Program-made: the position numbers and the translations under genes | In this document: positions 3,962 through 33,343 of the stretch, one piece after another | Position numbering within the stretch: the stretch's first letter is position 1 | How the letters are laid out: each line of letters opens with the position of its first letter | From: Diadema antillarum | Taxonomy: Eukaryota | NCBI RefSeq assembly: GCF_040938485.1 | Contig: NW_027272869.1 | Coordinates: 124,001 to 188,000 of the forward strand | DNA: 64,000 nucleotides | Reading direction: 5' to 3' | The notes under the pieces: generated by a model | Told to the model about the DNA's origin: nothing | The model's input: only the letters and a program-made list of their open reading frames with translations | The model's database searches: none

Positions 3962-3974
3962 AGTTCAAAGTACA
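3962..3974. promoter_or_regulatory. DR1-like nuclear-receptor (HNF4/RXR-type) element upstream of paralog D
   Basis: AGTTCA-A-AGTACA about 350 bp upstream of the ATG; the 12-mer GTTCAAAGTACA also occurs upstream of B and C. Confidence 0.55.
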
Positions 3975-4354
3975 ATGTCGATGTGAGCTGCAGGTCATTT
4001 TGTTTGTTTTGTTGAGTTAAATTCGTTTATTTTTTTATGAAAATAAATCTATGTTAGCACAAGGTGTATAACCTGCAAGTAGCCTGGCTGGTAAATATAC
4101 ATTATTATTTGCCTGTTGTATTTCAGTGTCGATTAAGAGTTAAAAATGGTGTATGAAACCTACTTACTTTTTTGTCAACCTTGCAAAGTGTGCATTTCTA
4201 TTTTTGCTTATTTTACGTAATAGCATATATAAGCCTATATACTTTATGATCCTTGCATTGTGTATTTCTTACCAAATGATACAACAATGATTTGTGTAAT
4301 GTTTGCTTTGTATTTTTATTCAACCTTTGTTGGATATTCTCAGAGAAATTATAA

Positions 4355-4412
4355 ATTGAATTGATTTGAATTGAATTGAATTGATTTTAATTGAATCGAA
4401 TTGAATTAGAAT
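4355..4412. repeat. (TTGAA)n degenerate microsatellite
   Basis: TTGAATTGATTTGAATTGAATTGAA... Confidence 0.8.
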
Positions 4413-4617
4413 CAAACGCCCAATATTCACAAGGCCTGTAACATCGGGGTGGGGCGAGATTGACAGAATGATGTCACAATACGTCACAAAGGTCAAGTCA
4501 GTGATGTCTTCATGACCACCAATTATACAATAAGTAGAGAATGACCCAATGTGTGAAGTCTGCTCCTTTTCAGTGGCAACGTCTGCACGTCTGCTCTCTG
4601 TGCTTTACAACAGAACA

Positions 4618-30200: not shown

Positions 30201-32891
30201 GGATCTTCGTTAACCCTTTGGATCAAATTTATAACCATGGAGTTACAGTTGTAGCTTCATGTTATCCATTCCCTATATACATTAGTAGATTCTATATCCT
30301 ACATCGTTAGATATATGAGATGGTACCTGAGTAGCTTAGATGCGATGAACTGTAAAGATACAAACAATTCTATAAAATACTAAATCTTCCCTATGAATGT
30401 TCTTACATAAACTGTTTTTGGACGTATGGTTCTTCCGTCAAAAAGACAGCACTGTAATACTGCCAAGTATGGACAGCTTGATGGAGGGGAAAATACAATT
30501 TTTTCTATTTTTTTTTAAATAAAGGTTGAACAGGATAATGAAATTACCTTTCATCCAGCTGCCACATACAGCGACGAGGAGCGCCGCGGAGTGATACAAT
30601 GGGAGTGAAATGTAGTATACATCCTCTGCTGAAAGATGGCTGTACAAATGGTAAAAGATTCCCGCACCCACAAGTTTCGAGTGAGGTATGACAGCCGGTT
30701 TTGGCATCCCTGGTATTGTGGGGGAGGGGTTGAATCAAACACACGATTGTTATACCTCAGTAGGTTAACATTATGATAAAAATTCAACACCAATGATGAT
30801 GATGATAATAAAAATGATTTTAACAATAAACATAAAATTAAATTACATTTCTTACAATACTAATGATGAATAACTGAATACAAAAATTAATGAATACATC
30901 ATTTTCATTATTTAATTAAGAATTTGGTGAACAGTAGTTAGTAGCACTATTAGGTATGCCTAACATGACGTTGAAAAACTTGATATGTCCTCCATAAGAG
31001 CAAGTGCACTTGCAAGGTTGCCGCTGAATTTAGCCTAGGATGAACGAAGTGTCACCAGGTGAGTGGATATAAGACTCAAACTGAAACAACGCCAACATGT
31101 CCAAAATTCAGGATTGGTTGTTAGATATAAATCCAGCGTCCTGTCAGCTGTATTATATAGTGCACTTCTGAGCGTCTTTTGCCAAACGATCTCGACCTAC
31201 GTTCTATGATCCTTCAGTTAAAGATAAAAAGGAAAGGTACAAAGTCTTGCAAGCTAGTAGGCCCCTCGGTCGAATCACTTAATTTCCTGAATGTCATTGT
31301 TGACTCAAATGGCAAGCATGGTGGTTATCAAAGTTACCTCTGACTAACCCTGGCATGCACTTAACATCGTTTCACTTTTTTTTGTAAGGAACAAAAGGAG
31401 CTCCTGTCGACAAACTCCTCTAAGCTTGATTTCCTCCTCGTACCCGTTGTTCCAGATGTAAAGATGTACGAAGCCACGTCTGTGAGATTCTCAATACGGA
31501 CCGAAGGGTAATGATCGTCGGATACGGTGTCGATATCCATGGTTACCAAATCGTTCGGCGGCGACATGTCCTCTATGCCCGTGTCGTTGACCATCCAGAG
31601 GTCGATGCCCAGGTCGCGGAGATCGGGTAAGATGTCGCACACGGCGGAAAGAAACTCTGTGGTCGACACAAATCAGAGTATGGAAATATTACGATGGGAC
31701 ACAGAATTGCTATGATCTCAGTCTACTGATTCGTGTGTAAATGTGAATGTGTCTACACAATAGTCATGTACATGTGTGCACTTTTCGAATCCACACTGTG
31801 GCAGAGTAGAGCGTCCTGTAGCCGAAGACTAGAATGAAACCTCTGTGGTGGTAGCTTTTCACATTATTCACTCCCTGAACTTCTTTCTGTAAGTTCAAGT
31901 TAAAGACATATCTAAAAATCCAATCAATGAAAACGCAGAAGTGTGAATAGCAAGTCCATCTTCGTGGATGGGGGGGGGGGGGGGGGGGTAGCGGGGGATC
32001 GATGCGATACGTAAACAAGAAACTACCATATCTGAAGTGTGTGTTTGAACATTTACACACTGGCTTTTCTCTATGTCATGTCTGTGTTTGATGTTTCGGC
32101 AACTTCGGCTCTCACAATAGATTCTTGGCTTACAAGATCTGGGCTCTGACAGATCATTTACAGCAGCACTAAGTTATAAAAATTGCTGCTAATTAGCAAA
32201 ACATACTGTACGAGTGAACAAACAAACGAAATGATCAAAGCTGATGATCTGTAGCTAAACAGTCTTGTTGCAGATGTAATGTTTTTGGTGACGTTTGGCC
32301 ATTCTTTGTTGGAAAGGGGAGGGTTATGATATGGGTACTGGCCTCATATCACTTGACTGAGCTACAAGTATTACAGTACTTTCAAAACAGCAAACCTGAA
32401 CCAAAGATGAGTTTCTTGGCTTCGCTCGTTCGTATACAGTGCAGAAGTGTAGCTCCACGGAGGTTGTAATTCATAAGGCTCGAAATGACGCCCAGCTTCA
32501 ACAGTCCCAACCACGTCCACAAAAACGTCGGCCCGTTGTGTAGCAGGACGCACACCGCGTCACCTTTCTTCAAGCTGGGGTCCGAACCGCTGATCCACCG
32601 CGCCGTCATGCTTGCCTTGCGGGACACGTCGGCATAACTGTACGATTCCTCTCGGTACAGGATGCAGGGATGGTTGGGAGTCTCCTTCGCGTACTTCTCG
32701 AAGAATTCAGGGACGGAAATTCTCTCCTTATCAAGGTTTTCAAGCGTTTTAAAGAACTTCATAATGCGGCGCATTTGTTCCACGTCAGACAATAAGGTCG
32801 GGTACTTCCATCGAAGCCAGGCATATCCAGATGGGATGGACACGGCTGCGATGGCTGCGGCCCTCTGGCCGGCACTCCAAGATGACGCCAT
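24245..32891 (-). CDS. SLC27A2-like: SLC27/FATP acyl-CoA synthetase, paralog B (9 exons, 629 aa, C-terminal SKL)
   Basis: Exons: 32396-32891, 31444-31656, 30548-30709, 29972-30096, 29343-29543, 28302-28395, 26409-26607, 25042-25139, 24245-24546; total 1890 nt with consistent phases 1,1,1,0,0,1,2,1. Motifs [36 protein letters not shown]; ends SGQSKL*. Confidence 0.92.
25717..26066. mobile_element. TA-flanked imperfect palindromic MITE in intron 7 of paralog B
   Basis: CTCCATTCCA...TCTCAT(C/A)GG(C/T)CACTCATC mirrored at the right end; inner arms TGTATC(G/T)GATCGCAGTC...TGAA...GAC also mirrored; absent from intron 7 of C. Confidence 0.6.
26972..27935. mobile_element. Degenerate Kolobok-like foldback MITE interrupted by the HINE
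   Basis: Starts TTAAAGGGGAATG; arm 27412-27700 is an imperfect inverted repeat of 27740-27930; a similar arm lies at about 2800-3065. Confidence 0.5.
26998..27411 (-). mobile_element. Helentron-type non-autonomous element (HINE), copy 2
   Basis: Reverse-complement homolog of 42294-42812 with the same subterminal repeats, hairpin and CTAGTT end; (CAAA)n tract; inserted into a TTAA-start MITE arm. Confidence 0.78.
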
Positions 32892-33330
32892 GTTAGAGTT
32901 CTGTCCTTAGTTTTTAGCGATCTACACGTGCTTGAAAGATAAAACTCCTGTTCCAGCTTCCTCAACACAATACATCAGGTACGTCTCCAACAATGGAAGT
33001 CAAATTGCGCGTTTGCACCACTGGGGTACCAGTGTTTTACCATCGGCTGAAGCGGGGTCAATAATAACAGAAACCCTGACTGCCTAAAGATGAGATTCTA
33101 AAGGTCACTCTTGTATTTCGTTTACACGATTACGATATCGATAAACGCTCTTGTGACTGTTGGCAGTCACTTGCCAACTAGCTCAATGTAAAAGCGTAAA
33201 TTCGACTCCAGCTAAATCCTTGTTCTTATAAATACCTCCCAACTCCTCTATAGGACTAGCACACCGGTTTTGTCATTGTCACGTACAGTGTACACATACT
33301 CTCATCTAGTCTCCTTTAGCTAAAAGGGTC

Positions 33331-33343
33331 TGTACTTTGAACG
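33331..33343. promoter_or_regulatory. DR1-like element upstream of paralog B (inverted)
   Basis: TGTACTTTGAACG, the reverse complement of CGTTCAAAGTACA, about 440 bp upstream of the ATG. Confidence 0.55.

What the first reader, a model, noticed from the sequence alone, without database searches (positions are those of the whole stretch)
3962..33343. The same 12-nt DR1/HNF4-like motif (GTTCAAAGTACA) lies 350-560 bp upstream of paralogs D, C and B, and is inverted in B
Seen: exact GTTCAAAGTACA at 3963-3974 (D), 19127-19138 (C) and in reverse complement at 33331-33342 (B). The upstream regions are otherwise mostly unalignable by eye, especially for D. I did not find it upstream of A. Established: a direct repeat of AGGTCA-like half-sites spaced by 1 nt with a CAAAGT core is the HNF4/RXR/PPAR/COUP class of element, and vertebrate fatty-acid activation genes are targets of these receptors. 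Inference: a phylogenetic footprint kept under selection, putting the derived paralogs under shared lipid-sensing nuclear-receptor control distinct from A.
Basis: partly seen in the sequence, partly recalled or inferred. Interest (0 to 1): 0.7.

Follow-up and report, generated by a model that had tools for sequence, protein, structure and literature searches.

The report
Shared upstream word of three FATP genes
Three neighbouring fatty-acid-transport/activation (SLC27/FATP-type) genes of a sea urchin share one exact 12-letter word a few hundred bases upstream of their start codons; it is probably a retained gene-control site, but which protein binds it, and whether any does, is not shown.

Summary
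GTTCAAAGTACA occurs exactly three times in the window, at 3963(+), 19127(+) and 33331(-). These lie 352, 560 and 440 nt upstream of the start codons of three minus-strand SLC27/FATP-like paralogs (D, C, B). It is absent upstream of A and of five other paralogs.

It is not repeat-borne. The 1.75-Gb genome holds 4034 copies, but 3468 (86%) sit in one satellite with unrelated flanks. The rest are at background.

A three-way shared 12-mer in 1-kb flanks has P of about 0.001. The extended 16-mer GACCGTTCAAAGTACA exists only at C and B in the whole genome.

C and inverted B also share a second exact block, TGAAGTGTTTA. D carries its 8-nt core 5 nt from the word. The D-C and C-B spacers are faintly collinear homologs.

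I read this as a small inherited module, flipped in B, and probably kept as a transcription-factor docking site (about 0.5).

The HNF4/DR1 label is only partly supported:
- The geometry and the CAAAG core fit, and the genome encodes an HNF4 with the human DNA-contact residues.
- The critical 3' half-site AGTACA matches neither AG[G/T]TCA nor HNF4-specific AGTCCA.
- TTCAAAG also fits TCF/SOX.

Orthologous promoters and RNA evidence could not be obtained.

The parts
3963..3974 (+). 12-mer GTTCAAAGTACA upstream of paralog D. With the preceding A it reads AGTTCAaAGTACA. It lies 352 nt from the ATG, antisense to the gene.
   Evidence: unique sequence in the genome apart from the haplotig
3950..3957 (-). 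TAAACACT (reverse complement AGTGTTTA; forkhead-like TGTTTAT), 5 nt from D's 12-mer. It is the 8-nt core of the second block shared with C and B, here in the opposite orientation relative to the 12-mer.
   Evidence: three-way shared 8-mer within +-120 nt: P 0.04-0.06
19123..19138 (+). 16-mer GACCGTTCAAAGTACA upstream of paralog C; the 12-mer is 19127-19138, 560 nt from the ATG.
   Evidence: this 16-mer occurs only at C and B, on both haplotypes, in 1.75 Gb
19054..19064 (+). Second exact block TGAAGTGTTTA in C, 58 nt from the 16-mer (forkhead-like TGTTTA).
19054..19156 (+). C copy of the roughly 65-100-nt module: block 2, variable spacer, 16-mer, then 18 nt reaching into the start of repeat R1.
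   Evidence: (19123-19156 vs 33346-33315, 82%, E 0.008)
33331..33346 (-). 16-mer GACCGTTCAAAGTACA upstream of paralog B, inverted relative to C and D. The 12-mer is 33331-33342, 440 nt from the ATG, here on the gene's sense strand.
33367..33377 (-). Second exact block TGAAGTGTTTA in B (followed by C, giving TGTTTAC), 20 nt from the 16-mer. It has the same order and relative orientation as in C, so the whole module is flipped.
33315..33377 (-). B copy of the module, inverted as one piece.
   Evidence: unique in the genome apart from the haplotig
3099..3611 (-). Exon-1 ORF of paralog D (AMP-binding N-terminus).
18058..18567 (-). Exon-1 ORF of paralog C.
32382..32891 (-). Exon-1 ORF of paralog B.
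19146..19400 (+). Dispersed repeat R1 (at least 40 copies, 69-83% identity). Its 5' end lies 7 nt beyond C's 12-mer, so the 12-mer is outside it.

Best explanation
The word is the core of a small module of about 65-100 nt. The module was inherited from the ancestral spacer of the D/C/B branch of a tandem SLC27/FATP gene cluster. It has been kept while the rest of the 5' flanks decayed or were replaced, and in B it was turned over as one piece by a micro-inversion. The most likely function is an orientation-independent docking site for transcription factors a few hundred bases upstream of each gene. That would give the three derived paralogs a shared input that A and the older paralogs lack.

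The three-way identical block covers exactly positions 2-13 of a 13-nt DR1. That is longer than a monomeric site needs, so an NR2-class dimer (HNF4, COUP-TF or RXR type) is the leading single candidate. A forkhead-like TGTTTA site sits next to it.

Shown: the presence, uniqueness and statistics of the word, the inverted two-block homology of C and B, and the weak collinearity of the D and C spacers.

Inferred: selection, function and factor identity.

My odds: functional cis-element of any kind about 0.5; specifically a DR1-type nuclear-receptor site about 0.2-0.25; specifically HNF4 about 0.1-0.15.
For: - Three exact copies against 0.02 expected.
- Any three-way shared 12-mer in the 1-kb flanks has P about 0.001.
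- Outside one satellite the word is at or below background: 4034 copies in total, 3468 in the satellite 18-mer context, against 779 for the reversed control.
- The window copies share no flanks with that satellite.
- The sequence around the B and D copies is unique in the genome. The C copy lies in unique sequence 7 nt outside repeat R1, which fills part of that 301-bp query.
- The 16-mer exists only at C and B in 1.75 Gb.
- C and inverted B share a second exact 11-mer in the same order, with a 38-nt length difference between the blocks. This is the footprint-like pattern of conserved blocks with a loose spacer.
- D has that block's 8-nt core 5 nt from its word.
- The D-C and C-B spacers are collinear beyond permutation (P about 0.0008, and about 0.0004 without the word), so the D and C copies are compatible with positional homology.
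- Neutral divergence is high. The 5' half of exon 1 has third-position identity of 0.55-0.60 for D against C or B, and whole-exon dS is about 0.52-0.54. Neutral survival of a given 12-mer is therefore about 0.1-0.4%.
- An element that works in either orientation points to a double-stranded DNA function, not an RNA one.
- DR1 geometry and the CAAAG core are present.
- An HNF4 DNA-binding domain with CDGCKG...FFRR is encoded in the genome.
- FATP promoters in mammals carry PPREs (PMC5694779).
Against: - There is no cross-species, expression, chromatin or binding evidence.
- The transcription start is unknown, so 'promoter' is an assumption.
- D shares only 12-13 nt, with no flanking similarity.
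- Pairwise exact 12-13-mers between these multi-kb spacers are expected at E about 0.5-2, and a second one exists between D and C (3718-3729 / 19508-19519).
- The second shared block is only marginally significant (P 0.04-0.06).
- The 34-nt C-B island is 82% identical, no better than C-B introns at 80%.
- The 3' half-site AGTACA departs from both accepted half-sites.
- DR1-like sites with 2 or fewer mismatches occur about once per 1.2 kb.
- The haplotype comparison has no power: the word is kept on both haplotypes, but so is most of the flank.
Confidence: 0.5

Rival explanations
1. No function. The C-B island is a neutral scrap of a rearranged, once-homologous flank. D's 12-mer is a coincidence, or a chance survivor in a decayed homologous spacer, noticed because a reader was looking for anything shared.
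For: - D has no flank similarity.
- Pairwise 12-13-mers between the spacers are expected at E 0.5-2, and one other exists.
- The island's identity of 82% is about the same as neutral C-B identity of 80%.
- A reader could have reported 10- or 11-mers, other paralog triples or wider flanks, which raises the effective P from 0.001 towards 0.01-0.03.
- The DR1 match is imperfect and such near-matches are common.
Against: - The three-way P of about 0.001 already covers any 12-mer in either orientation.
- D's copy falls exactly inside the only exact run of 12 nt or more between C and B.
- The 16-mer is unique to C and B genome-wide.
- There is a second shared block close by in all three.
- Given third-position identity of 0.55-0.60, neutral survival of this particular block in D is about 0.3-1%.
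Confidence: 0.3
2. It is a functional site, but for an HMG-box factor (TCF/LEF or SOX, core WWCAAAG = TTCAAAG) or another factor, not a nuclear receptor. This is a variant of the main explanation and differs only in the factor.
For: - TTCAAAG is a full match to WWCAAAG (read directly from the sequence; the consensus is from established knowledge).
- The nuclear-receptor 3' half-site fails the consensus.
- C and B have C rather than A/G at DR1 position 1.
Against: - The three-way identity runs 5 nt beyond the HMG core through GTACA and spans the full DR1 footprint. A 7-9-nt monomer site would not require that.
- No helper or neighbouring TCF features were seen.
Confidence: 0.12
3. The copies are fragments of an abundant repeat.
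For: - The word is five-fold over-represented genome-wide (4034 against 779).
- D's 18 nt match the satellite word 17/18.
- C's copy lies 7 nt from the edge of repeat R1.
Against: - 86% of genome copies are one satellite whose flanks do not resemble those of the window copies.
- The sequence around the B and D copies is unique in the genome.
- R1 copies elsewhere do not carry the word, and their 5' flanks are unrelated.
- The 16-mer is found only at C and B.
Confidence: 0.03
4. The word was spread between paralogs by short-patch gene conversion or template switching, without selection on it.
For: - Gene conversion is active in this cluster. The 3' half of exon 1 is 92-100% identical among D, C and B, with third-position identity of 0.89 against 0.55-0.60 in the 5' half.
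- C-B similarity ends abruptly 19 nt upstream of the ATG.
Against: - A 12-16-nt tract inside non-homologous flanks, 600-900 nt from the converted tract and inverted in B, does not fit homology-dependent conversion.
- The less similar 5' half of exon 1 lies between the converted tract and the word.
Confidence: 0.05

Closest known systems
DR1-type nuclear-receptor response element (AG[G/T]TCA n AG[G/T]TCA; HNF4, RXR, PPAR/RXR, COUP-TF)
   Same: Two hexamers in direct repeat with a 1-nt spacer and the CAAAG junction. It lies upstream of fatty-acid-handling genes, as do the PPREs reported in mammalian FATP promoters (PMC5694779). It can act in either orientation.
   Different: The 3' hexamer is AGTACA, two mismatches from AGGTCA. 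C and B start with C instead of A/G. No binding has been shown, and near-matches of this quality occur about once per 1.2 kb in the window.
[quoted passage not shown] 2012, PMC3384313)
   Same: CAAAGT at positions 5-10, and C and A at positions 12-13. The genome's HNF4 keeps the Asp and Arg that confer this specificity in human HNF4alpha.
   Different: Position 11 is A, not C. The paper reports that among all position 10/11 permutations only TC gives HNF4-specific recognition. The word is therefore not an H4-SBM by definition.
TCF/LEF and SOX HMG-box sites (WWCAAAG)
   Same: TTCAAAG is a full core match.
   Different: Conservation extends 5 nt beyond what such a site needs. No evidence links Wnt or SOX input to these genes.
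FoxA + HNF4 composite gut/liver enhancers of vertebrates
   Same: A forkhead-like TGTTTA(C/T/G) lies 5-58 nt from the DR1-like word in all three flanks.
   Different: TGTTTA is frequent in this AT-rich DNA. The three-way 8-mer is only marginally significant (P 0.04-0.06). C's version (TGTTTAG) misses the forkhead consensus at the last position.

Membership tests
DR1 nuclear-receptor element | Two hexamers in direct repeat separated by 1 nt | tested here: met
   (A/C)GTTCA a AGTACA at all three sites
DR1 nuclear-receptor element | 5' hexamer fits AG[G/T]TCA | tested here: inconclusive
   D reads AGTTCA and fits. C and B read CGTTCA, with a mismatch at position 1.
DR1 nuclear-receptor element | 3' hexamer fits AG[G/T]TCA (the half-site HNF4, RXR and COUP-TF rely on most) | tested here: not met
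   AGTACA in all three. The 3' preference is from PMC3384313.
DR1 nuclear-receptor element | Bound by a nuclear receptor dimer | not testable with these tools
   No binding or chromatin data are reachable.
HNF4-specific motif (H4-SBM) | CAAAGTCCA at positions 5-13 | tested here: not met
   CAAAGTACA, with A in place of C at position 11. The definition is from PMC3384313.
HNF4-specific motif (H4-SBM) | Host HNF4 with the specificity residues (human Asp69, Arg76) | tested here: met
   DNA-binding domain at G000:C29:6885140-6885346 reads ...SCDGCKGFFRRSVRK.... The residue mapping onto human HNF4alpha numbering is mine, from the P-box position.
TCF/LEF-SOX HMG-box site | Core WWCAAAG | tested here: met
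   TTCAAAG lies inside the 12-mer (sequence). The consensus is from established knowledge.
Phylogenetic footprint among paralogs | More conserved than the surrounding non-coding sequence | tested here: met
   It is the only three-way shared word of 10 nt or more in the 1-kb flanks. No other local alignment rises above low-complexity matches.
Phylogenetic footprint among species | Present at orthologous promoters of related species | not testable with these tools
Dispersed repeat or satellite fragment | Flanks match a repeat family | tested here: not met
SLC27/FATP (very-long-chain acyl-CoA synthetase) genes | AMP-binding domain and the ...DR.GDTFRW... signature | tested here: met
   Pfam PF00501 on exon 1 of D, C and B. 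GYV(Y/F)F(L/I)DRVGDTFRW is found at 26417-26449 (B); the C copy at 9355-9387 reads up to ...GDTFR and then meets a stop in frame. That this motif is the FATP signature is from my own knowledge.

The most novel reading that the evidence does not exclude
The module is a true FoxA-plus-HNF4-type composite enhancer that has survived at least 0.5 substitutions per neutral site, including a flip, in an echinoderm FATP cluster. That would show that HNF4 control of fatty-acid activation/transport genes predates vertebrates, and that echinoderm HNF4 tolerates an AGTACA 3' half-site.
Probability: 0.12. Interest if true: 0.55.

Novelty: new member of a known kind. Interest (0 to 1): 0.3.

Why it matters
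If functional, the module would be a compact, testable handle on how a young branch of a tandem FATP gene family acquired or kept a common regulatory input distinct from its older neighbours. It would also be a rare candidate nuclear-receptor or forkhead target site in an echinoderm metabolic gene. As it stands it is a well-supported candidate cis-element with an unproven factor. That is useful for anyone annotating this locus, but not surprising to a specialist.

Tried and rejected
- **Satellite origin.** The five-fold genome-wide excess of the word is due to one satellite with a period of about 2 kb. Its flanks do not match those of the window copies. Rejected.
- **Repeat R1 at C.** An alignment of 23 copies puts the repeat's 5' end at about 19146, which is 7 nt beyond the word. 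Flanks of the other copies are unrelated. Rejected as the carrier.
- **Hidden extended homology of the flanks.** Smith-Waterman and sensitive BLAST in both orientations gave only T-rich low-complexity matches.
- **A large inversion of the B spacer.** No collinear chain was found in either orientation.
- **Other paralogs.** There is no copy with 2 or fewer mismatches upstream of A, of E (C1981:105590-106045), or of four dispersed paralogs, apart from chance-level hits.
- **Haplotype comparison (contig C794).** The word is kept, but the flanks are 95-99.5% identical, so there is no power.
- **RNA evidence for the transcription start.** No run was listed.
- **PBM supplementary tables of PMC3384313.** They are not held as text, so it could not be checked whether CAAAGTACA was bound.
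- **Position weight matrix scan.** No library was available and I did not type one from memory. Consensus matching was used instead.
- **Spliced gene model.** Exon 1 was used by reference only.
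Full report
**Observation.** GTTCAAAGTACA occurs exactly three times in the 64-kb window, at 3963-3974 (+), 19127-19138 (+) and 33331-33342 (-). Expectation is 0.02, and no shuffle out of 100 gave three. With up to 2 mismatches the window holds 9 sites against 9.6 expected, so only the exact copies stand out.

The neighbouring genes lie on the minus strand. Each has a 169-170-codon first coding exon: D at 3099-3611, C at 18058-18567 and B at 32382-32891. These exons carry the N-terminal part of the AMP-binding domain. 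Later exons read GYV(Y/F)F(L/I)DRVGDTFRW in B; the C copy is read only as far as ...GDTFR. From my own knowledge this is the FATP / very-long-chain acyl-CoA synthetase (SLC27) signature.

The transcription start sites are unknown.

**Genome context.** The window is G000:C1981:124001-188000 of a 1.75-Gb assembly. Almost every locus in it appears twice, so it looks diploid. Contig C794 carries the same cluster at 95-99.5% identity, with the word intact at all three sites.

Earlier notes of this scan name the animal as the sea urchin Diadema antillarum. I did not verify this. The size, heterozygosity and repeat content fit.

The cluster has a fifth paralog, E, at C1981:105590-106045, left of the window. 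Four more dispersed paralogs lie elsewhere.

**Is it a repeat?** Genome-wide the word occurs 4034 times, against 779 for the reversed control. However, 3468 of these (86%) sit in the 18-mer context AWTGTTCAAAGTACAACA, whose control count is 0. That context belongs to a satellite with a period of about 2 kb and two copies of the word per unit. The satellite has no ORF of 90 aa or more and no Rfam match.

Its flanks do not resemble those of the window copies. The best case is D, where 17 of 18 nt match.

At most 566 copies remain outside the satellite. That is at or below background, about 3e-7 per base, or 0.02 per 64 kb.

The 301-bp surroundings of the D and B copies occur only at the locus itself and on the haplotig.

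The C copy lies 7 nt outside the 5' end of a dispersed repeat, R1 (19146 to about 19400, at least 40 copies). The boundary is clear in an alignment of 23 copies, and the other copies have unrelated flanks.

**How non-random is it?**
- Any 12-mer shared by the three 1-kb flanks, in either orientation, arises in about 0.1% of first-order Markov replicates. For an 11-mer the figure is 0.25%, and for a 10-mer 1.5%.
- Pairwise, exact 12-13-mers between these multi-kb spacers are unremarkable (E 0.5-2). D and C share a second one, TGATATTTTGTA at 3718 / 19508.
- The signal lies in the three-way coincidence.
- C and inverted B share more: 34 nt at 82% (19123-19156 against 33346-33315, E 0.008).
- This includes the 16-mer GACCGTTCAAAGTACA. 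In the whole genome it occurs only at C and B, on both haplotypes. One-mismatch variants are not enriched (40 against 90 for the control).
- D's match falls exactly inside that run.

**A second block and the inversion.** C and inverted B also share an exact 11-mer, TGAAGTGTTTA, at 19054-19064 and 33377-33367. It has the same order and orientation relative to the 16-mer in both, and lies 58 nt from it in C and 20 nt in B. B therefore carries the whole module of about 65 nt flipped, not just the word.

B's module ends in TTTTAGCTAAA, which resembles the first 11 nt or so of R1. This suggests R1 was already beside the word before C and B separated, and that one inversion or deletion breakpoint in B lies just inside R1. 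That is inference.

D has the 8-nt core of the second block (TAAACACT, 3950-3957) 5 nt from its word, but in the opposite relative orientation. A three-way shared 8-mer within 120 nt either side has P of 0.04-0.06. This is supportive but weak.

The blocks read as forkhead-like TGTTTAC (B), TGTTTAT (D) and TGTTTAG (C). The forkhead consensus is from my own knowledge.

**Age and homology of the flanks.**
- Across exon 1, dS is 0.20 for C-B and 0.52-0.54 for D against C or B.
- The exon is a mosaic. Its 3' half (codons 94-165) is 92-100% identical in all three pairs, with third-position identity of 0.89. In the 5' half, third-position identity is 0.55-0.60 for D against C or B, and 0.84 for C against B. 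This looks like gene conversion, so the true age of D is nearer saturation.
- C-B similarity of about 80% runs through intron 1 and stops abruptly 19 nt upstream of the ATG. That is either a conversion boundary or a duplication breakpoint.
- Beyond that point, no alignment of the flanks rises above low-complexity matches.
- Even so, the D-C spacer (3612-6343) and the C-B spacer (18587-23945) form a collinear, same-strand chain of short matches. It scores 257 against 171 +/- 25 for permuted block order (P about 0.0008). Without the word's own hit, P is about 0.0004.
- These two spacers are therefore decayed homologs, and the D and C copies of the word are compatible with positional homology at the gene-proximal end of the chain.
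- The B-A spacer shows no such chain.
- At this divergence a given 12-mer survives neutrally with a probability of about 0.1-0.4%. That is about 0.3-1% for the five windows inside the C-B 16-mer (my arithmetic).

**What binds it?** As a DR1, the element reads AGTTCAaAGTACA in D and CGTTCAaAGTACA in C and B. That is 1 and 2 mismatches to RGKTCAnRGKTCA. The window has 52 sites of that quality, so DR1-likeness alone means little.

Fang et al. 2012 (PMC3384313) report three relevant points:
- HNF4, RXR and COUP-TF rely mainly on the 3' half-site.
- HNF4 additionally recognises xxxxCAAAGTCCA.
- Among all permutations of positions 10 and 11, only TC is HNF4-specific.

Here the 3' half-site is AGTACA. 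That is neither AG[G/T]TCA nor AGTCCA, so the strict membership tests fail at position 11.

The prerequisite for HNF4 is met. The genome encodes an HNF4-type DNA-binding domain (...SCDGCKGFFRRSVRK..., G000:C29:6885140-6885346). It keeps the Asp and Arg that give human HNF4alpha its specificity. HNF4, COUP-TF and RXR are described as part of a basic nuclear-receptor set acting in marine-invertebrate development (PMC7827873).

In favour of a dimeric site, the three-way identity spans exactly DR1 positions 2-13. Against exclusivity, TTCAAAG is a full TCF/LEF-SOX core. Mammalian FATP promoters do carry PPREs (PMC5694779, citing Frohnert et al. 1999), so the biological idea is reasonable by analogy only.

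**Verdict.**
- The best reading is a small inherited module, flipped in B, and probably retained as a transcription-factor docking site (about 0.5).
- A DR1-type nuclear receptor is the leading but weakly supported candidate (about 0.2-0.25 overall; HNF4 itself about 0.1-0.15).
- The main rival is no function, that is a decayed homologous spacer plus coincidence (about 0.3).
- Repeat origin (0.03) and short-patch conversion (0.05) are unlikely.

**Limits.**
- The look-up of sequencing runs listed no RNA run, and read laying was not used.
- No PWM library was available.
Exons were searched by reference only.
- The window has no N stretches.

Noticed in passing
window 3117-3341, 18073-18297, 32397-32621 (minus strand; 3' half of exon 1 of D, C, B): Exon 1 is a mosaic. 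Its 3' half is 92-100% identical in nucleotides among all three paralogs (third-position identity 0.89). In the 5' half, D against C or B shows third-position identity of only 0.55-0.60. This looks like gene conversion among the tandem FATP genes. C-B similarity, which includes intron 1, ends 19 nt upstream of the ATG.
   Followed up: partly
L011 = G000:C2:1072500-1077900 and thousands of other places: A satellite with a period of about 2 kb carries two copies of the 12-mer per unit. The 18-mer AWTGTTCAAAGTACAACA occurs 3468 times genome-wide. There is no ORF of 90 aa or more and no Rfam match. It explains the five-fold genome-wide excess of the 12-mer.
   Followed up: partly
window 3612-6343 vs 18587-23945: The D-C and C-B intergenic spacers keep a weak collinear chain of short same-strand matches (permutation P about 0.0004-0.0008). 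The B-A spacer does not. The C-B spacer is about twice as long, partly through repeat insertions.
   Followed up: partly
window 19146-19400; 4158-4416; 33917-34239; 19960-20100: Dispersed or tandem repeat families fill parts of the three 5' flanks: R1 (at least 40 copies), a family of about 250 bp in D's flank, a very abundant tandem family of about 160 bp in B's flank (1234 first-look candidates), and another abundant family in C's flank.
   Followed up: partly
G000:C29:6885140-6885346 (second haplotype C254:1788832-1789038): An HNF4-type nuclear-receptor DNA-binding domain with P-box CDGCKG followed by FFRRS. The same scan lists 66 zf-C4 matches at E of 1e-10 or better, which in this diploid-like assembly means about half that number of loci.
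   Followed up: partly
G000:C1981:105590-106045 (18 kb left of the window): A fifth FATP-like paralog (E) in the same orientation, 46% identical to C in exon 1. There is no copy of the 12-mer within 3 kb upstream.
   Followed up: partly
G000:C794:3910000-3980000: A second contig carries the whole cluster at 95-99.5% identity, as a haplotig. Most protein hits in this genome come in such pairs.
   Followed up: partly
window 4356-4404 and 4600-4677; 19586-19633; 33679-33721: Microsatellite-like runs, (GATTT/ATTGA)n and (TTTTG)n, recur in the 5' flanks. They produce the best but meaningless local alignments between the flanks.
   Followed up: yes
window 60671-62857 and 35579-36267: Two local tandem arrays, seen as self-matches at 75-88% identity over many registers. 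Neither was examined further.
   Followed up: no
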